DNA of 64,000 nt, from positions 1-64,000 of the forward strand of contig NW_003314317.1 of assembly GCF_000143415.4 (NCBI RefSeq), in the 5' to 3' direction. Under the pieces are notes generated by a model that saw only the letters and a program-made list of their open reading frames with translations, was not told where the DNA came from and did no database searches. The stretch comes from Selaginella moellendorffii. Its lineage: Eukaryota > Plantae > Lycopodiophyta. Made by a program: the position numbers and the translations under genes. Shown here in pieces: positions 41,901-51,282 of this stretch (position 1 is its first letter; every line of letters starts with the position of its first letter).

Positions 41901-44900
41901 TGCAGCAGAGCTTTGTCCGTCAGCTGTTCAAGGTGCAAGGTGCGTTTTTCTTTTTCTTCTGTTTCGCTCCGTAGTTTCTAATCTAAGTCGTTCTATGTAG
42001 ACTGGAAGTGGTTCAGCGGCTTGCACAAATTACTTCGGTAGAACTCGGCGGGAAGTCAACAACGTCGCACGATGACAGCAAGCTAGACCAGTGGCTTCTG
42101 TATTCAATGTTTGCATGTTCATGTCCTCCTGAGGACGTGGAGGACACCAAGTCGCACTCTACGAAAGAGTTGCTTCGTCTAATTTTGCCGTCTTTGAAGT
42201 CAGGTTCCGAGACTCAAATTGTAAGCCTTCCTTCACTCGACCATTCTGATGCTTACTTGTACCTGTGTTCATGTCCCCCACAGAATGCGGCTACCTTAGC
42301 GTTGGGACACTGCCACTGGGAGATTTGCGAACCAATGCTCACGGAATTACGACAGTTTCTGGACGAAATTGCAACGGAGATTGAAAGTCGTCCCAAGTGG
42401 AAGGTATGACGAGTCTGCCAAAAGGCTTCTGTGTTGATGTTTTCCGTTTACAGAGTCAAAAACTTAGGCGAGAAGACATTCGTGTGCATGTTGCAAACAT
42501 ATACCGAATGGTGGCAGATAATTTTTGGCCTGGTATGCTGATACGCAAGCCCGTTCAACGTATTCATGTGATCAAGTTCATTGAAGACACAGTCAAGTAC
42601 ATCACGTCAGCGTCTCCGCTGGAGGTTTTCCAAGATTTGCAACCTCTAAGATTTTGCCTAGGCTCCGTGCTACGATCAGTCTCCGTCGAAATGGTGAAAT
42701 CCAACTCGGACCGGTTTGATCCGCGAACAAGGAAGCGGATGTTCGATCTGCTCGCGTCCTGGTGCGACGATACTACGACTGTCTGGAGCCAAGACGGTGT
42801 TAGCGAGTACCGACGGGAAGTGGAGCGGTACAAGTCATCACAAAACTCCAGGACTAAGGACTCTGTGGAGAGAATCACTGTAGAGAAGGACGTCAACGAA
42901 CAGGTGGATGCAATCCAGTGGATCGCTATGAACGCTATGGCCGCTCTGTTATATGGGCCTTGCTTCGACGACAACGTCAGGAAGATGAGTGGGAGAATCA
43001 TCGCATGGATCAACGGCCTTTTCCTTGAACCGGCCACTAGAATGCCTATCGGGTATTCTCCAGATCCTCGTACACCACTCCATAAGTTCGCCATGGCTGG
43101 AGTCTTTGACGTAGTTCACGGTGGTAAGGACAGGCACAAGAGCAATCCTATGCGAGTTCATCTTGCGAAAGTTGCTCTTATGAACCTCGTTCAGACCAAC
43201 CTCGATCTCTTCCCAGCATGCATCGACCAGGTTTGTGATTTACTCATGAGTTTTTGGTGGCATTACTATTTACGTTTTGTTGCAGTGCTACTCTTCTGAT
43301 CCTTCTATCGCGGATGGGTATTTTTCTGTTCTTGCCGAAGTGTACATGCGGTACGAGATACCAAGGTGCGACACCCAAAGACTGTTAAGCCTCATACTCT
43401 ACAAGGTTGTGGACCAGTCTCGGAGGATTAGAGATGATGCATTACAGATGCTAGAGACTTTATCCATCAGGGAATGGGCTGAGGATGGGGAAGGAACGGG
43501 AAGGTATCGAGCAGCGGTCGTGGGAAGTTTACCAGATTCTTACCAACAATTTCAGTATCAGCTGTCTGCAAAGCTAGCAAAGGAACATCCAGAGCTGAGT
43601 GAGCTACTTTGCGAGGAGATCATGCAAAGGCAGCTGGATGCAGTGGACATCATCGCTCAGCATCAGGTTCTTACGTGCATGGCTCCTTGGATTGAAAACT
43701 TGAAGCTCTGGGAATCGGGATGGAGTGAGAGACTGCTGAAGAGCCTTTACTACGTAACTTGGCGTCACGGGGATCAGTTCCCTGATGAGATTGAGAAGCT
43801 GTGGCGGACAGTGGCAAACAAGAGACGAAATATCAGTCCCGTCCTCGACTTTCTGATATCTAAGGGCATTGAAGATGGTGACTCAACCGCATCAGGAGAG
43901 ATTACTGGAGTTTTTGCGACGTACTTCTCGGTGGCAAAGCGGATAAGCCTTTACTTGGCTCGAATATCACCACAGCAGACAATAGATCATCTCGTCTACG
44001 AGTTGGCAGAGAGAAGACTTGAAGATCATCCGGAGCAATCGAAACGAAGTGTAGATGGAGCGTTTGAGCTTGAAAGCTCTGCTGTTTTGGAGTTCTCGCA
44101 AGGACCAGCTCCCGTTCAACTGCTAGAACCGCCGCCGCATATGTCACCACTTCTGGTCAGGAGCTCTCTGGAAGGACCACTGAGGAATGCCAGCGGGAGT
44201 TTAAGCTGGAGAACAGCCACAGGTCGGAGTATGTCGGGTCCTCTGAATACTATCCCCGACACGCATACCGGGAGGTCTGGCCAGCTATTCACGGGATCAG
44301 GACCCTTGCCAAATGCTTCGGGCCAGCTTTTGGGAGTTCGTAGTTCCACAGGAAGCGTGAAGAGTCACCACTTATCGCGTGACAGTGGAGACTATTTTGA
44401 CACTCCGAATTCGGTTGAAGACATACGTATCATTACTCCACCGGTGAACCCGAGCGAGCTGCAGTCGGCTCTTCAGGCCCATCACCACTGGCTTTCTCGT
44501 GCGGACATTGCTCTGATACTTTTGGCGGAGATAGCTTACGAGAATGACGAAGACTTTCGAAGCCACCTTCCGCTGCTCTTCCACGTTACGTTCGTATATA
44601 TGGATAGCTCCGAAGACATTGTTTTGAAGCATTGCCAGCAGCTGCTGGTGAATCTTCTCTACTCGCTAGCGGGACGACATCTTGAACTTTACGAGCATGG
44701 TGATGGAGATTACAAGCAACAAGTCGTGAGCCTGATCAAGTACGTGCAGTCGAAGAAGGGAAGCAGGATGTGGGAAAAGGAATCAATGTCTTTGACGAGA
44801 ACGGAGTTGCCAAGTGCTGCTTTACTATCTGCGCTGGTGCTAAGTGTGGTGGACGCGATAGTTTTCCAAGGCGACCTTCGGGAGAAATGGGGGGAGGAGG

Positions 44901-46321
44901 CTTTGAAATGGGCTATGGAGTGCTCATACCGTCATCTGGCCTGCCGGTCTCACCAGGTTTACCGTGCACTCCGTCCCAGTGTCACCAGCGAGACGTGTGT
45001 TTCACTGCTAAGGTGCCTACATCGATGCTTCAGCAATCCAACTCCTCCAGTGCTGGGATTCGTCATGGAGATCCTCCTGACTCTGCAAGTGATGGTAGAG
45101 AGCATGGAACCCGAGAAAGTTATTCTCTATCCACAGCTCTTCTGGGGCTGTGTGGCCATGCTGCACACGGACTTCGTCCACGTTTACGTCCAAGTTTTGG
45201 AGCTGCTTTCCCGGATTGTTGATCGGCTATCCTTCCACGACCACACCGCCGAACAGGTTCTTCTGTCCAGTATGCCCAGGGACGAGTTTGAGAGCAGCGA
45301 AGGGAAAGGTGACGGGGGAACAGACGCAGACAAAGCTCCGGCGTTTGAAGGAGTGCAGCCGCTGGTTCTCAAGGGACTCATGTCAACAGTGAGCCATACG
45401 TGTGCTATCGAGGTGCTGTCGAGGATAACTCTGCATTCGTGCGACCGGATTTTTGGCGACTCGGACACTCGTCTGCTGATGCACATCGTGGGCCTCCTGC
45501 CTTGGCTCCTGCTTCAGCTCGTAAAAGGACAGAGTCACTTACCCGGTTTCGACTCGCCACTCCAGCAGCAGTTTCAAAAGGCTTGCTCTGTCGCGACAAA
45601 CATCGCTCAGTGGTGCGAGGCAAAATCGCAGGGAGCTCTAGCGGCTGTTTTCTCCGCTTACGGGAATGGACAAGTCACCGCCATCGGAGACTTGCTCAAC
45701 CGTATAGTACCGTTGCTGTGCAAGGAATGGTTCCCTCGGCATTCGGCGCTGGCATTCGGCCACCTTTTACGTGTTCTGGAGAAAGGACCAGTGGAGTACC
45801 AGCGAGTGATTCTCCTCATGCTCAGGGCGCTCTTGCAGCACTGTCCGATGGATACCGCCCAGAGTCCTCAAGTTTACGCTGCCGTCTCTCAGCTCGTGGA
45901 GAGTCCTCTCTGCTGGGAAGCCTTACATGTTCTAGAGGCGGTTTTGCAAAGCTGCAGCACTTTGCCGGTGGAAGCTACAACTTCCAGCGGACAGGATGCC
46001 ACTGCCAACGGACAAGCAGCGACGAGGAGGCTAGACGAAGACAGGCCTGTCGTTGCCTTGCTCTCGCAGACTTCTTTCAAGTCTCGGACAGGTCCCTTCC
46101 ATTCCTGGGTTGGCTCTGGTGGAGTTCCTGCGGTGACTGGAAATCCCGGCAGTGTTGACATGACGATGCTTCCATCGCGCGAGACGGCGCTGCAAAACAC
46201 CAGGCTGGCACTGGGACGTGTTTTGGATACTTATGGCGTGGGAAAGCGCAGGGACTATCGGCGTCTTGTTCCATTCGTTATTAGCAGCGTTCAAGCTGAG
46301 CCGCAGCAAAAACACCGGTGA
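38956..46321 (+). CDS. Furry/MOR2-PAG1/TAO3-like cell morphogenesis scaffold
   Basis: [70 protein letters not shown]; large HEAT/ARM-type protein. Confidence 0.93.
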
Positions 46322-46660: not shown

Positions 46661-48010
46661 TCAGGAAGCTTGTGCAGCGAGCTGCCACTGGAGGAAATAA
46701 CAGCCGAGTTTGATAAGTTTGGACGCTTTTTGTAACGCCCCAAGCTTCCCCTGCTCGGCAGCCAACCGGGTGTCGTCGATCACGTCCCTCGTCACCTCCG
46801 CGTCCGCCAGTGGTATGGGGTAGTAGTACCGGCTCAAGTTTTGCATGGAAGTCGTGAAGAAGCCGGTCATCTGGGATCTTATATCACCAACCTCGATGGC
46901 TCGGTAGCCAGACGCGACAGCTTCCTGGACGAGGCTATCTTCCGCGGCCTTGAGCGCCTTGAGCAGCTCCCTCCTCGGCTTGGCCTCACGCTGCACGAAC
47001 TTGAGAAGCTCTCCATACGTTCCTTCGCCAACCGGCTTGCTCTCGAAGGGCCCGTGCTTGAGGAACTGTCCGAGGTAGCCGGTCTTCTCGTCGCCGACGA
47101 GAGCTCTGGCAGTCTCGGAGATGTGGTTGATGAGGTGCGTGCTGAGCCGCTTGTGAGCAAACTCGAGGATCTCGAACGCAGCAATCTGCCTGGAGGAGTG
47201 GATGAGCCTCTTGAGGTGCAAGTCGCAGTTGTTCTCGTCCCAGCAACTGATGATCCTCTTCAAAGCAGGTTCGATGGTGTTGTTTCTCGATTGATTTTCT
47301 TGACTGTGATCTTGTTGATGGCAGCTCTGTGCTCGTCTTTTCTCGTCAAAGCTGGTGGCGGTGGCGGCCGAATGATCAAAGACTGGCTGTTCCAAGTACT
47401 CGGAGTTTCGAGCTTGCTCCAGAGAATGGATCCTCTCCTGCTTCAAGCTGTTGAGGTAGTCGACTCTTCCCCGGGCCTGCTGCTCCATGACATCCAGCTT
47501 ACTCTTGATACTCTCCAGCTGCTTGTCCTCCATGTTCTGGATGACGCTCCTCATCGACTCCTGCTTGCTCCCCAGCGACTGGATGCGGTCCTTGAGCGAG
47601 TTCTTCCCCTTGAGCAGCGACTTTATCTCCGACTCGAGCGTGGAGAAGTTGTCCAAGAGCGACTGCATCGTATCGTCGTCCTTGGGCTCGAATCCTCCAA
47701 ACGCAGCGGCAGTGACAGCAGCGGATTCTTCCGGTGGAGCAGTGGCAGCAGAGACGCGATCTTTGGCGGTGAAACTAGTAGGATCGAGCGCGGGGCTGGC
47801 GAGGGAGTATGGGCTCAAAGCATAGGCCCCGGCGGTGGGGGTGGAGGAGTAGGACTTACACGAGGAGTCGGAGATGGTGCTGGGCACGAGACGGACTCTC
47901 TTGGGAAGGACTGCTGTTGCCGATGGTGATGGCGAGTGAGAATGCGAGTCGGAGTGGGAGTGGGAGTGGAGGCCACCATTCTTCCTGGGACGAGACTGGA
48001 TGTCGTACAT
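46661..48010 (-). CDS. Uncharacterised intronless protein: Ser/His-rich N-terminus, coiled coil, helical C-terminal domain
   Basis: About 449-aa ORF with strong GC3 codon bias and heptad periodicity; no family recognised. Confidence 0.7.
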   Translation of the reverse strand: MYDIQSRPRKNGGLHSHSHSDSHSHSPSPSATAVLPKRVRLVPSTISDSSCKSYSSTPTAGAYALSPYSLASPALDPTSFTAKDRVSAATAPPEESAAVTAAAFGGFEPKDDDTMQSLLDNFSTLESEIKSLLKGKNSLKDRIQSLGSKQESMRSVIQNMEDKQLESIKSKLDVMEQQARGRVDYLNSLKQERIHSLEQARNSEYLEQPVFDHSAATATSFDEKRRAQSCHQQDHSQENQSRNNTIEPALKRIISCWDENNCDLHLKRLIHSSRQIAAFEILEFAHKRLSTHLINHISETARALVGDEKTGYLGQFLKHGPFESKPVGEGTYGELLKFVQREAKPRRELLKALKAAEDSLVQEAVASGYRAIEVGDIRSQMTGFFTTSMQNLSRYYYPIPLADAEVTRDVIDDTRLAAEQGKLGALQKASKLIKLGCYFLQWQLAAQAS

Positions 48011-48455
48011 TTTCACGCGCTCATCACAGGATAGGGCTGGGGGCTTTTAACGGAACGGGCTAACTGCCAACCTGGCACGAAATATTATCTCATGTTTTAT
48101 AACAGAAGGAATGCGTTTAAAGCGTTGATCACATTTTGGAACTTGCTGTTCTACGTCCTGCCATTGAAACAACAAAGTCACAAATCCGTCTGGACTATAT
48201 TAGATGAGCTCGCATTCGCTGGAGTTTGTTTGAGCACGCAGTGGCGGCAGGAGTCAAGCACTGAGGTAAGCACACTTAAAAATCAGTTACTTCTGGTAGA
48301 AACCACATGCGTAAAAGCACTTTGGCTCGGGTTTGGCTTAAGAAAATGCGAAAGCTTATAAGTGTTGGAAATGTAAGAATTACAGCAATTCCCATGATAG
48401 AATAAAGTACTCACATACCATAGACAATTCCAGATCGATGTGCTTCTGGATGAAA

Positions 48456-49023
48456 TCACACAACCTGTTCCAGCATGAGATTGTTGGTCACCTTTGGACA
48501 CATGTTGAGGCAGCCGGCTATTTTGTTATACTTGCAGCAGTAGTACTCGTGTCCCGATTCACAGCGCTGACCGCAACCGAACTTATTTTCCCGGCAGCAA
48601 ACGTAGTCCTTGCTCTTATCGCACATCTGGTGGCACCCATATCCGTTTTTGACGCAGCATTCATATTCGGCGTTGGAATCACACTCCTGAACGCAGCCCT
48701 GAAAGTTTTTGATGCAGCAATAGCTGCCGCCAAGGCCTTGGAAACACAAACACTTCAAGTATGAATTGATGGTCGTGCGAAAAAGAATGTGACTCTCATT
48801 TACCGTGCTGAGGAGGTTCGTGGATGGTGGTCACAAGCTCCATAGAAGGCTCCTCAATCGTATTCATAACGCCCTTGTTGCCCACTGCTTACAACACAGT
48901 TCAATGGATGTAATAGACGGGAAAGACTTAAAGCGCAAAGTACATGCCTTCAATATCGCGAGATGCATTTGCCAAGAGCACCAGGCCAAAGACAAGGCAG
49001 GCAATTGCAGGAAGCTTGGCCAT
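48456..49023 (-). CDS. Secreted cysteine-rich repeat precursor, 146 aa; exons 49023-48948, 48887-48804, 48736-48456
   Basis: Signal peptide MAKLPAIACLVFGLVLLANA, acidic pro-region, four 20-aa units Y.CC-x6/7-C-x3-C, hydrophobic tail LMLEQVV; two phase-1 introns (first is GC-AG). Confidence 0.85.
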
Positions 49024-49521
49024 TTTCCAAGGATAGGAGAGATTCCAAAAGATGAAACGAGCAAAGGATGTACTTTGGTGCCCTTTCTTTGATCACAATT
49101 TATACTGTGAGGCTGGCATGGATCGCGTGGGAAATCCTTTTCCAAGTCAATCCCATGCTAAGTATCTAGATTGCAAGCAAATCCCAGTTAAATACACAAG
49201 ATTGAGTTTGATAATCTTGTTCTTGACTGTCCTAGACTGTACATAAACAAATATTATATGCCAAACTTCCCATCGATCACATGAATCGCTTCTCTAGACG
49301 GTGAGAAATTTGGGTGTCCTGAAAGTTGCAGCACAGCTAGAGAAAATTTATGCTTTTTTCAAAGGGTAACAGCTCAAATGTCAGATTCACTGGTTTTATG
49401 GGACTGGTACAATACAGCCCATCAGCCACGTGGGTCTAGCAGTAGGATTATCGCCAAGAACTATACACATTTAATAGACATGAAAATATCACTGACCTTA
49501 TGTTAATGTTGTAGACAATGT

Positions 49522-51282
49522 TTATTGAGAGATATCCATCTTCGTGTAGCCATGCATTCTTAGCAGCTCCAGAAGCTTTTGCATGTGAACTTCGGTGTGC
49601 AAAACTCTTGGGCCAAGCCGGATAGAGTTGACATAATTTACAGGATTGTGATCCACAATCCCAGGAAAGAATAGCCCCGCAACACGAAGCACACGGGATG
49701 CCATCGCCTCCTTGAACTGCGACCCATGCAAGTAGCTCCTCCTGAAACTTAGAATCAACTCCCAGGCTGCCGTGATCCGTGTCACGATGAAGTACTTGAT
49801 TGAGAAGTTCTTATTTGGTTCTTCGAGCAGCGTCTGAAAAGCATCACGCGCATCAGCAGTAAGATTTGTAGTAACAATCATACGTACCTTTGCAGTGTAG
49901 TTGTGGTCGAAGTAAAAGCACAGACCAAAGTGCTTGAACTGGAAGAATATATCATCAAACGGGATCCTGGGAACGATGTCGTTGGAGTAAACGATCCGAA
50001 AGTAGCGGTTCACTGGGTCATTGAGCTTCTCGTCCATGTAGTCTGCAAAATCTATGTCTCCAACTCGAGGCTGGCCGAAAGTATACACCCCTGCTATCCT
50101 CTCCGTGACCGAGTCTTCCTTGTTATAGAACAGCATCGCCGTGAAAACTGTGGCCAGAGCTCCACCAAGGCTGTGTCCCGTAATGTAGACTTTGGCGCTC
50201 TTGTTGGCTTTCACAAGCTCCTTCAACTTGTCCTTGGTCGAATCGTAGGCCAACGAGAGCTTCCTGTCCTCGTTTTTAGCCTCTGGCAAGCCGGAAGTGA
50301 CGCGCTCTTTGCCTTGAACGTTTTGATAGCTGTGCTTCTTGAGCCTTGTAAAGGATTCCATGTCGTGGCGATCCACCAGGCTGAGAGCTTCCATAAAGCC
50401 CACATGGATTCTTCCGACCCCCGGAAGGTGGTACCAGGAGAAATCAAAGTCGGTGCTCCAGTCGTATGCGTTGAACGGCATGGTTCCTCTGAACGTGACA
50501 ACGATTGCGCCGGCGTCCTGAGGTGCATCCATGAACAGAAAAACCTGAGTTGGATTGTTCTCTTGGTTCTCTGCATCGTAATAGCTTCTTTCAGTCAGCA
50601 CGGAGCCTTTCAAGATTAAATACTTAACTGTTGATGCACTCGAACACATTCACAAGGCACATCTGAAAATATTGTGGACGCGTTAGAATCAGAACGTTGG
50701 GTCACATACCTTCCAGATCTGAGTAACAACTTTGTTTACAACCGCCGGGTTTTCGTACGCAAGCTTCGAAGCCATGATGCACACGTCTGCCACGACTTTT
50801 GATCCGGGAACCACTTCAAAGAAACTGCTGCCTTCAGATTTCTGAAGCTTCTGATCGTCGGAACTTTCGGTCATCAGCTCCAATCTCGGGTCTAGCATCC
50901 CCACAATGCTCCAGTAATTTTCCGAGCCTTCTACGGGCATTACTAAGACTGCAGTGAAATAGACAACTGAGAGTCCTTGCAAAAACAAGAGCAATAGCTT
51001 ACATTCACCAGCCAAGATCTTGTTGCAGACTTTGATGAATCCACCGTTTATGTAGAAAACGTTGAGAATGTACTCCACGAATTTACCAGTAACCTTAGAG
51101 ATCCGTGCCAGGTAATGCAGAAGCGTGGTGATGAACATCGAAAGTTTGGCCTGCCAGCTGACATCGATCCTGGGCTTAAGTGCCGGTGTGGAGCTTACAT
51201 GTGGTGTTTCCACAAAGGAACTACGGCGAACATAGTCCCACGGCTTGCCTTGACTTGGATGGCCGATTACAAAGGTGTCCAT
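49522..51282 (-). CDS. Class 3 lipase (OBL1-like triacylglycerol lipase); 5' end uncertain
   Basis: MASKLAYEN, VVTFRGTMPF, WSTDFD, HVGF, ITGHSLGGALA, YTFGQPRVG, YSNDIVPRIP, VDHNPVNYVN. Confidence 0.92.

What the first reader, a model, noticed from the sequence alone, without database searches (positions are those of the whole stretch)
48456..49023. Secreted polyprotein-like precursor with four CC-x6/7-C-x3-C peptides
Seen: the spliced product is a signal peptide, an acidic pro-segment (SRDIEAVGNKGVMNTIEEPSMELVTTIHEPPQHGLGG), then SYCCIKNFQGCVQECDSNAE / YECCVKNGYGCHQMCDKSKD / YVCCRENKFGCGQRCESGHE / YYCCKYNKIAGCLNMCPK, then VTNNLMLEQVV. It has 16 Cys in a 20-aa period, conserved Y, N and G, variable loop residues, and spacers bounded by D/E. 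Established: Impatiens Ib-AMPs are 20-aa CC-x8-C-x3-C antimicrobial hairpins cut from one precursor with acidic spacers, and short hydrophobic C-terminal tails can act as vacuolar sorting signals. The pattern does not match defensin, thionin, hevein, LTP or snakin spacing. Inference: a possibly undescribed family of two-disulfide defence or signalling peptides, vacuole-processed. The short spacers and low net charge also allow a single repeat domain instead.
Basis: partly seen in the sequence, partly recalled or inferred. Interest (0 to 1): 0.85.

Follow-up and report, generated by a model that had tools for sequence, protein, structure and literature searches.

The report
Spikemoss secreted cysteine hairpin-repeat protein
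This is a real, strongly transcribed gene of the spikemoss Selaginella moellendorffii for a small secreted protein with four 20-residue cysteine-rich repeats; it belongs to a fast-evolving family found only in this species, and the repeats most likely fold together as one domain instead of being cut into separate peptides.

Summary
A three-exon gene on the minus strand (49023 down to 48456) encodes 145 aa: a signal peptide, a 36-aa pro-region, four CC-x6/7-C-x3-C repeats with 16 Cys, and a short tail. It is RefSeq LOC9654180 of Selaginella moellendorffii, an uncharacterised protein.

- **Transcription and splicing:** RNA reads confirm strong transcription and both introns, including the GC-AG one.
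- **Family:** at least 16 protein clusters, all from S. moellendorffii, with three or four repeats each. There is no Pfam hit (including Granulin), no PDB sequence or fold match, and no paper.
- **Polyprotein idea not supported:** linkers are 5 aa, not acidic as a rule, and carry no conserved cleavage motif. The units are near neutral. Repeats have position-specific identities. AlphaFold2 models four contiguous beta-hairpins with confident linkers.
- **Evolution:** the two haplotype copies differ by dN/dS of about 1.2, against 0.13-0.33 in the neighbouring genes, and every Cys is kept.

My reading is a lineage-specific secreted disulfide-rich repeat protein, probably a binding or defence protein. 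Disulfide connectivity and function are untested. First readers of this scan noted the same family on other pieces of this genome.

The parts
49099..49104 (-). TATAAA box upstream of the transcript start
   Evidence: Read directly from the sequence. Read depth begins about 25-50 nt downstream.
49024..49058 (-). 5' UTR; many read ends at 49050, 49051 and 49058, with low depth up to about 49085
   Evidence: tables 2 and 6; the X1 contig reaches 49062.
48948..49023 (-). Exon 1 coding part: signal peptide (aa 1-20, 48964-49023, ending ANA before S) and the start of the pro-region (SRDIE)
   Evidence: The signal peptide was judged by inspection (n-h-c regions, A-x-A); no predictor was available.
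48885..48947 (-). Intron 1, 63 nt, GC-AG
   Evidence: Joint 48884/48948 in 475, 967 and 538 reads and in one X1 contig. The GC donor is also present in the other haplotype copy, while paralogues have GT at this place.
48803..48884 (-). Exon 2: variable pro-region (VGNKGVMNTIEEPSMELVTTIHEPPQH, first base of Gly)
   Evidence: This region is variable in length among paralogues and alternatively spliced in LOC9662029.
48736..48802 (-). Intron 2, 67 nt, GT-AG
   Evidence: Joint 48735/48803 in 236, 492 and 253 reads and in one X1 contig.
48666..48725 (-). Repeat 1 (aa 57-76): SY-CC-x6-C-x3-C plus linker DSNAE
   Evidence: modelled as hairpin E8-14/E17-23.
48606..48665 (-). Repeat 2 (aa 77-96): YE-CC-x6-C-x3-C plus linker DKSKD
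   Evidence: modelled as hairpin E28-34/E37-43.
48546..48605 (-). Repeat 3 (aa 97-116): YV-CC-x6-C-x3-C plus linker ESGHE
   Evidence: modelled as hairpin E48-54/E57-63.
48492..48545 (-). Repeat 4 (aa 117-134): YY-CC-x7-C-x3-C-PK, the family's distinct terminal repeat ending MCPK
   Evidence: modelled as hairpin E68-74/E78-84.
48456..48491 (-). C-terminal tail (VTNNLMLEQVV) and TGA stop (48456-48458)
   Evidence: pLDDT is below 50 in the models. The tail is weakly conserved in the family as TVNLM or T..GNL.
48338..48455 (-). 3' UTR, up to the poly(A) site
   Evidence: An X1 contig ends at 48338 followed by a run of T on the + strand, which is poly(A) on the transcript (table 7).

Best explanation
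This is an expressed three-exon gene of Selaginella moellendorffii (LOC9654180). It belongs to a family of small secreted cysteine-rich proteins so far seen only in this species.

The signal peptide sends the product into the secretory pathway. A variable 30-45 aa pro-region follows. After it come three or four 20-21 aa repeats of consensus Y-CC-L-K-N-G-(F/Y)-G-C-x-Q-x-C-(D/E)-x4, and then a conserved end, CPK plus a short tail.

I infer that each repeat forms a beta-hairpin whose Asn-Gly-aromatic-Gly segment makes the turn. The hairpins most likely pack into one rigid array laced by disulfides, and the array stays in one piece. It is probably not cut into 20-aa peptides.

The cysteine and turn scaffold is conserved, while the linkers and exposed positions change fast. 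This pattern suggests a binding protein that faces an outside or fast-changing target, meaning defence against microbes or binding to a wall polymer.

Shown: gene structure, transcription, splicing, family membership, restriction to this species in the databases searched, and the elevated replacement rate. Inferred: secretion, the hairpin array, the absence of processing, and any function.
For: - **Gene and transcript:** established.
- **Family:** 16 clusters at 90% identity, all from S. moellendorffii, share one architecture. An exhaustive phmmer search of 1.84 billion representatives found nothing credible outside the species. Its only other hits were bacterial CAP-domain proteins at E 1e-5 and 7e-4, in an unrelated region.
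- **Structure models:** AlphaFold2 with 5 and with 14 sequences gave the same best model, pLDDT 79 and pTM 0.61. It has eight strands forming four hairpins. The 10-residue blocks that include the 4-residue inter-hairpin turns score pLDDT 83-92.
- **Linkers:** they are 5 aa. The first residue is D or E, and positions 2-5 vary with place in the array. Of 39 linkers, 20 contain Asn and 7 contain a dibasic pair. Unit charge is 0 to +2 and domain pI is 7.3-8.8.
- **Repeat positions:** each repeat position is most similar to the same position in paralogues (0.59-0.70, against 0.40-0.60 for other positions). The last repeat is the most distinct. The DNA shows no detectable tandem repeat.
- **Haplotype comparison:** the other haplotype copy (P0024, on GL377571.1) is colinear at 97.2% over 12.6 kb. 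Exon 3 is 6.07% diverged against a 1.83% background, Poisson p of about 3e-5. dN/dS is 1.19, against 0.33 and 0.13 for the two neighbouring genes. All 16 Cys are kept.
Against: - Only one of five AlphaFold2 models is confident; the others have pLDDT 43-53. The alignment is shallow and comes from a single species, so the hairpin array is a prediction of moderate weight.
- I could not read coordinates, so disulfide connectivity is unknown.
- In regular hairpins the two Cys of a CC doublet face opposite sides and the C-x3-C pair share one side. A pure ladder would therefore leave one Cys free at each end. This is unexplained.
- Short linkers do not by themselves exclude processing. Nicotiana Pot II precursors are cut at a 5-aa EEKKN linker (PMC2259423).
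- There are no protein-level data, and the tissue of expression is unknown because run ids are coded.
- dN/dS near 1 can also mean relaxed constraint rather than selection.
Confidence: 0.6

Rival explanations
1. Polyprotein precursor. The pro-region and linkers are trimmed in the vacuole or apoplast, releasing three or four different peptides of about 15-20 aa. Each has two internal disulfides (C1-C3, C2-C4) as in Ib-AMPs, and acts as an antimicrobial or signalling peptide.
For: The unit has the same order of Cys as Ib-AMP, CC...C-x3-C, with a Gly/aromatic-rich loop. The copy number of units varies between 3 and 4. A pro-region is present, and every linker starts with D or E. Short linkers can be processing sites in other plant precursors, as with Pot II EEKKN. 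Intra-repeat pairing would avoid the free-end problem of a ladder.
Against: Loop length is x6/7, not x8. Units are near neutral, whereas Ib-AMPs carry about +5. Linkers are 5 aa against 16-35 aa, and they are neither conserved across positions nor generally acidic. Glu in 14 of 39 linkers rules out a uniform Asx-specific (AEP) site, and only 7 of 39 linkers are dibasic. Repeats within one protein are only 37-50% alike here and have position-specific identities, with a distinct capping last repeat. This differs from Ib-AMP, whose precursor carries Ib-AMP1 three times. AlphaFold2 treats the linkers as ordered turns. phmmer found no link to any Impatiens protein.
Confidence: 0.18
2. Multi-headed protease inhibitor. 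Each hairpin presents its conserved Lys/Arg, the second residue after CC, as a P1 residue in a disulfide-framed loop. This would work in the manner of Bowman-Birk or Pot II tandem inhibitors and target microbial or herbivore proteases.
For: There is a conserved K/R in the C-L-K-N-G-aromatic-G-C loop. The architecture is tandem, the family is a clustered multigene one, and evolution is fast. All of these are typical of plant inhibitor families (PMC2259423).
Against: In known inhibitor families the reactive loop is the hypervariable part. Here the loop is the most conserved part, and the variation sits in the linkers. There is no sequence or fold match to any inhibitor family. In this gene itself, two of the four loops have lost the K at that place.
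Confidence: 0.1
3. Highly diverged granulin homologue. UniRef calls several members 'Granulins domain-containing protein', and granulin is a ladder of four beta-hairpins pinned by disulfides from CC doublets.
For: The UniRef names appear. The granulin fold is described as four stacked beta-hairpins with six disulfides (PMC4527844). The model here also has four hairpins and CC doublets. The nearest named Atlas cluster by features is 'Granulins domain-containing', with cosine 0.76, which is a lead only.
Against: None of the 16 members matches Pfam Granulin even at E<=10. The Cys pattern is 4 x (CC, C, C) = 16 with full units at both ends, not the 12-Cys C,C,CC,CC,CC,CC,C,C pattern. No granulin structure was recovered by Foldseek or VIA-align. 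Three-repeat members exist. Similarity in architecture may be convergent.
Confidence: 0.1

Closest known systems
Ib-AMP precursor of Impatiens balsamina (CC-x8-C-x3-C peptides)
   Same: Secreted precursor with repeated units of about 20 aa. Each unit carries four Cys in the order CC, C, x3, C and has a Gly/aromatic loop.
   Different: The loop is x6/7, not x8. Units are near neutral, not +4/+5. Linkers are 5 aa and position-specific, against 16-35 aa acidic propeptides. Repeats are diverged and the last one is a distinct cap. No sequence relationship was detected. Facts on Ib-AMP come from PMC10136942.
Granulin/epithelin module (Pfam PF00396)
   Same: Small secreted disulfide-rich module with CC doublets. 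Four beta-hairpins are predicted here and are observed in granulin.
   Different: 16 Cys in a strict 20-aa period against the 12-Cys granulin motif. There is no Pfam match and no structural match. The hairpin number varies between 3 and 4 among paralogues.
Potato type II (Pin-II) multi-repeat proteinase inhibitor precursors
   Same: Tandem cysteine-rich repeats behind a signal peptide, 5-aa linkers, a conserved cysteine scaffold with fast-evolving surface residues, and clustered gene families.
   Different: Pot II repeats are about 50-58 aa with 8 Cys and a hypervariable reactive loop, and their linker EEKKN is conserved and cleaved. Here the loop is conserved and the linkers vary. There is no sequence or fold match.
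Other orphan secreted cysteine-rich families of S. moellendorffii noted in this scan
   Same: Lineage-specific, secreted, repeat-built and clustered, annotated only as hypothetical proteins.
   Different: Those families have different Cys frameworks (CxxC/CxxxC modules; C-x3-W-x-W-x4-C). This family has the CC-x6-C-x3-C hairpin unit.

Membership tests
Ib-AMP-type polyprotein | Cys motif CC-x8-C-x3-C in each 20-aa unit | tested here: not met
   Units are CC-x6-C-x3-C (three) and CC-x7-C-x3-C (one). The family as a whole is x6 or x7. The motif definition is from PMC10136942.
Ib-AMP-type polyprotein | Highly basic units (5-6 Arg) | tested here: not met
   Net charge per unit is 0, 0, +2, +2 here and 0 to +2 in 16 family members.
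Ib-AMP-type polyprotein | Units separated by acidic propeptides of 16-35 aa | tested here: not met
   Linkers are 5 aa, with 7 aa from Cys to Cys. Only the first linker residue is always acidic.
Ib-AMP-type polyprotein | Proteolytic release of the single units | not testable with these tools
   Needs peptidomics or intact-mass measurement. There is no conserved cleavage motif, and the linkers are modelled as ordered turns.
Ib-AMP-type polyprotein | Detectable sequence homology | tested here: not met
   phmmer against 1.84 billion representatives and two profile searches returned only S. moellendorffii proteins, plus two spurious bacterial hits.
Granulin (PF00396) | Match to the family profile | tested here: not met
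   No Granulin hit at E<=10 for the exon-3 product, P0001, P0002 or any of 16 members.
Granulin (PF00396) | Conserved pattern of 12 Cys (single Cys at both ends, four CC doublets) | tested here: not met
   There are 16 Cys as four identical CC,C,C units, and 12 in three-repeat members but in the same unit pattern. The definition is from PMC4527844.
Granulin (PF00396) | Stack of four beta-hairpins pinned by a disulfide ladder | tested here: inconclusive
   Four hairpins are predicted, but no granulin structure was recovered: best Z 2.8 to the GyrA C-terminal domain, and Foldseek found nothing. Disulfides could not be read from the model.
Classical plant cysteine-rich peptide families (defensin, thionin, hevein, nsLTP, snakin/GASA and others in Pfam) | Match to any curated family profile | tested here: not met
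   Pfam-A scan at E<=10 gave no family for this protein. Across the 16 members there were only stray sub-threshold hits: RECK CC4 at 0.28 and others.
Secreted protein (classical signal peptide) | N-terminal n-h-c signal peptide with a small-x-small cleavage site | tested here: met
   MAK, then a 14-residue hydrophobic core, then A-N-A before S21. The same layout is present in all paralogues. This is by inspection only; no predictor was available.
Pot II-type processed multi-repeat inhibitor | Conserved linker that is the cleavage site, and a hypervariable reactive loop | tested here: not met
   Linkers vary by position and the loop is the most conserved part. The definition is from PMC2259423.

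The most novel reading that the evidence does not exclude
The family is an independently invented disulfide-rich fold. It would be a modular ladder or meander of beta-hairpins, with one hairpin per 20-aa CC-x6-C-x3-C unit. The number of rungs (three or four) has been changed by unequal crossing-over without breaking the fold. One conserved edge is built from Lys-Asn-Gly-aromatic turns, and the other edge is hypervariable and used for recognition. This would be a lycophyte counterpart of granulin-like or repeat-scaffold binding proteins. A still bolder version is also not excluded: the units are released as a cocktail of different two-disulfide mini-peptides.
Probability: 0.3. Interest if true: 0.6.

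Novelty: new variant of a known kind. Interest (0 to 1): 0.45.

Why it matters
Plants hold many lineage-specific secreted cysteine-rich proteins, and few from lycophytes have been looked at. This family has four features worth attention:
- a simple, strictly periodic cysteine framework that no curated family, solved structure or indexed paper covers;
- strong expression;
- a natural series of three- and four-unit versions;
- allelic replacement rates far above those of its neighbours.

If the predicted hairpin array is right, it is a small, possibly new disulfide-rich scaffold with a tunable number of units. That would interest peptide engineers and people who study how repeat proteins grow. 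If the units are released instead, it would be a second plant example, unrelated to the first, of an Ib-AMP-like multi-peptide precursor. Either outcome can be settled with one mass-spectrometry experiment on Selaginella tissue.

Tried and rejected
- **Pfam:** scans of the exon-3 product, both database models and 16 family members gave nothing, Granulin included.
- **PDB by sequence:** a profile search at E<=10 gave nothing.
- **Fold searches of both AlphaFold2 models:**
  - Foldseek against PDB gave E 9.9 only.
  - VIA-align over 48,161 chains gave a best Z of 2.8, to GyrA and topoisomerase IV C-terminal domains.
  - The second look gave nothing.
  - The ESM Atlas by shape gave TM<=0.37, to an RHS repeat.
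- **ESM Atlas by features:** 0.78 and 0.76 only, and nothing for P0014.
- **Homologues outside S. moellendorffii:** none in the exhaustive phmmer search or in two profile searches. P0006 and P0007 are bacterial CAP-domain proteins and I rejected them as chance matches.
- **Tandem repeats at DNA level:** none found, so the repeats are old.
- **Paralogue in this window:** none.
- **Papers:** none names these loci, and the Selaginella cysteine-rich peptide, granulin and peptidome searches gave nothing on this family.
no RNA joint supports either.
- **Disulfide connectivity:** could not be read because model coordinates are not returned.
- **Not used:** Complex prediction, because no binding claim is made.

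Full report
**What is there.** The finding lies on the minus strand. Reading the sequence shows an ATG at 49023, a hydrophobic leader, two short introns, and a last exon that holds four copies of CC-x6/7-C-x3-C at a 20-aa period, with a stop at 48456-48458. A six-frame scan of the whole window for a looser form of the pattern (CC-x5-9-C-x3-C) finds these four tandem units and only three isolated chance matches elsewhere. The array is therefore not a chance feature. The window has no paralogue.

**Organism and annotation.** A protein search with the last exon returns two models of this same locus from Selaginella moellendorffii. One is RefSeq XP_024543843.1 (LOC9654180, 145 aa, 'uncharacterized protein'). 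The other is the older JGI model SELMODRAFT_422294 (115 aa), which UniRef names 'Granulins domain-containing protein'. The gene is thus already predicted, but nothing is known about it. None of six locus names of this family that I searched, this locus among them, occurs in the indexed literature.

**Transcription and splicing.**
- Three stranded RNA-seq runs and one set of transcript contigs were laid on 48150-49300. All reads have the orientation expected for a minus-strand RNA.
- Depth reaches several hundred in the exons and falls to a few reads in the introns.
- The joint 48735/48803 (67 nt skipped, GT-AG on the coding strand) is seen in 236, 492 and 253 reads.
- The joint 48884/48948 (63 nt skipped, GC-AG) is seen in 475, 967 and 538 reads. 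One contig carries both joints.
Its acceptor is the second AG of a tandem pair, so exon 2 begins at 48884 and the product reads DIE-VGNK.
- With these junctions the coding sequence is 438 nt and translates exactly to the RefSeq protein.
- Skipping of exon 2, as in the JGI model, has no read support.
- Read ends cluster at 49050-49058, downstream of a TATAAA at 49099-49104. One contig ends at 48338 in a poly(A) run, giving a 3' UTR of about 118 nt.

**The other haplotype copy.**
- Most reads differ from the window at fixed places. Applying those differences reproduces SELMODRAFT_439279 (P0024) on scaffold GL377571.1.
- That scaffold is colinear with the window over 12.6 kb at 97.2% identity and has the same neighbouring genes. 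I take it to be the second haplotype of this assembly.
- The RNA-seq plants express almost only that copy. The contig run holds both copies.
- Both copies keep the GC donor, while paralogues have GT at the same place.
- Between the two copies, the repeat exon is 6.07% diverged against 1.83% for the whole 12.5 kb. That is 17 substitutions where about 5 are expected, Poisson p of about 3e-5.
- Twelve codons are replaced and two are silent. Nei-Gojobori dN/dS is 1.19, against 0.33 and 0.13 for the two flanking genes.
- All 16 Cys are unchanged, and the changes sit mostly in the linkers between units.

**The family.**
- Profile searches find 16 clusters at 90% identity, all from S. moellendorffii. 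Several sit on one 4.46-Mb scaffold within a segmental duplication.
- An exhaustive phmmer search of 1.84 billion representatives adds nothing outside the species, apart from two bacterial CAP-domain proteins that I regard as chance.
- All members share one plan:
  - a signal peptide;
  - a variable 30-45 aa region;
  - three or four repeats of consensus Y-CC-L-K-N-G-(F/Y)-G-C-x-Q-x-C-(D/E) followed by four more residues;
  - a distinct last repeat ending MCPK, and a short tail.
- The member in this window is among the most divergent. Its turns read KNFQG, KNGYG, ENKFG and YNKIAG.
- First readers of this scan noted the same family on other pieces of the genome.

**Polyprotein or one domain.** According to a review (PMC10136942), Ib-AMPs are 20-aa CC-x8-C-x3-C peptides with 5-6 Arg and C1-C3/C2-C4 bonds. 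They are cut from a precursor whose six units are separated by acidic propeptides of 16-35 aa. This family differs on each measurable point.
- The loop is x6 or x7.
- Units carry a net charge of 0 to +2, and the domain pI is 7.3-8.8.
- Linkers are five residues. Only the first linker residue is always acidic (D 25, E 14 of 39).
- Asn is present in 20 of 39 linkers and a dibasic pair in 7 of 39, so there is no uniform Asx-specific or dibasic site.
- Repeats are not interchangeable. Each position in the array is closest to the same position in paralogues (0.59-0.70 identity against 0.40-0.60). The last repeat is a distinct cap, and within this protein the units are only 37-50% alike.
- The DNA no longer registers as a tandem repeat.
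- AlphaFold2, run with 5 and then with 14 family sequences, twice gave the same best model (pLDDT 79, pTM 0.61). It has eight strands forming four hairpins, and the 10-residue blocks that include the four-residue connections between hairpins score pLDDT 83-92.

There are limits to this conclusion.
- Four of the five models in each run were poor (pLDDT 43-53).
- The alignment comes from a single species.
- Short linkers can be cleavage sites elsewhere, as with the EEKKN linker of Nicotiana Pot II precursors (PMC2259423).

**Disulfides.** I could not read coordinates. From strand geometry (established knowledge), the two Cys of a CC doublet in a regular strand face opposite sides, and the C-x3-C pair share one side. 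With regular hairpins, at least one bond per unit should therefore go to a neighbouring hairpin, which would tie the units together. Such a ladder would leave one unpaired Cys at each end of an array made of complete units. The alternative, all bonds inside each unit as in Ib-AMP, needs irregular strands. This point is unresolved.

**Comparison with known families.**
- No Pfam family matches any of 16 members at E<=10, Granulin included. No PDB sequence matches the profile.
- Fold searches gave no credible match: Foldseek E 9.9, VIA-align best Z 2.8 to the hairpin spiral of the GyrA C-terminal domain, and Atlas TM<=0.37 to an RHS repeat.
- Granulin is described as four stacked beta-hairpins pinned by six disulfides, with a 12-Cys motif (PMC4527844). 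The resemblance to the model here (four hairpins, CC doublets) may explain the UniRef name. The defining profile and Cys pattern are not met, so I do not file the protein as a granulin.

**Function.** Nothing is tested. The following features are those of plant proteins that meet external or fast-changing partners:
- secretion;
- a rigid cysteine scaffold;
- a conserved row of Lys-Asn-Gly-aromatic turns;
- hypervariable linkers;
- gene clustering;
- high transcript level;
- allelic dN/dS near or above 1.

My best guess is a binding protein of defence or of the cell wall. A multi-headed protease inhibitor is a weaker alternative, because in this family the loop is the conserved part rather than the variable part.

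**Verdict.** The claim of an undescribed family is supported within the reach of these databases. The polyprotein mechanism is not supported but is not excluded. It is a lineage-specific secreted cysteine-rich repeat family of moderate interest, and its open question (one domain or several peptides, and which disulfides) can be settled by a simple mass-spectrometry experiment.

Noticed in passing
window 48456-49023 versus L002:6001-6568: RNA-seq runs X21-X23 carry almost only the other haplotype's copy, for example 425 of 434 reads at 48838. The contig run X1 holds both copies. This is either allele-specific expression or a plant line that lacks this haplotype.
   Followed up: partly
window 48666-48673: Seven of nine adjacent bases differ between the haplotype copies. 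This turns linker 1 from DSNAE-Y into DSSIT-Y, which resembles the DSNIT-Y of paralogue LOC9662029. It may be a small gene-conversion tract.
   Followed up: no
P0011 (LOC9649156) versus P0004 (LOC9641423), other scaffolds: One of the two near-identical copies lacks six residues (YGCTWM) of repeat 2. That leaves 11 Cys, an odd number. It is either a damaged allele or a mis-modelled one.
   Followed up: no
P0005 (SELMODRAFT_438189, 610 aa): This gene model starts with a family signal peptide, pro-region and two repeats, then runs on into unrelated sequence that UniRef names a protein kinase domain (not scanned here). It is probably two genes merged by the annotator.
   Followed up: no
window 48946-48947 and L001:4757-5291, L001:10001-10525: The GC donor of intron 1 is specific to this gene and is shared by both haplotype copies. 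The paralogues in the GL377567.1 cluster have a GT donor at the equivalent exon 1 end. The GC intron is nevertheless spliced efficiently.
   Followed up: yes
L001 (GL377567.1:714416-738950): Three family genes lie interleaved with duplicated Peptidase_S28 and FtsJ/Spb1 genes, so the family expanded there by segmental duplication.
   Followed up: partly
window 46661-48016 (-): An intronless 451-aa ORF directly downstream has an HSHSHSDSHSHS tract near its N-terminus and no Pfam match. It is conserved in the other haplotype (458 aa) with dN/dS 0.33.
   Followed up: partly
window 49522-50649 (-) and 43277-46321 (+): The neighbours are a class 3 lipase (Pfam Lipase_3, E 2.5e-37) and the C-terminal part of a MOR2/PAG1 (Furry-like) cell-morphogenesis protein. 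Neither has an evident functional link to the cysteine-rich gene.
   Followed up: yes
run X19 (organism B): One 2025 run labelled with a different organism holds 16% of the sampled words of this stretch.
   Followed up: no
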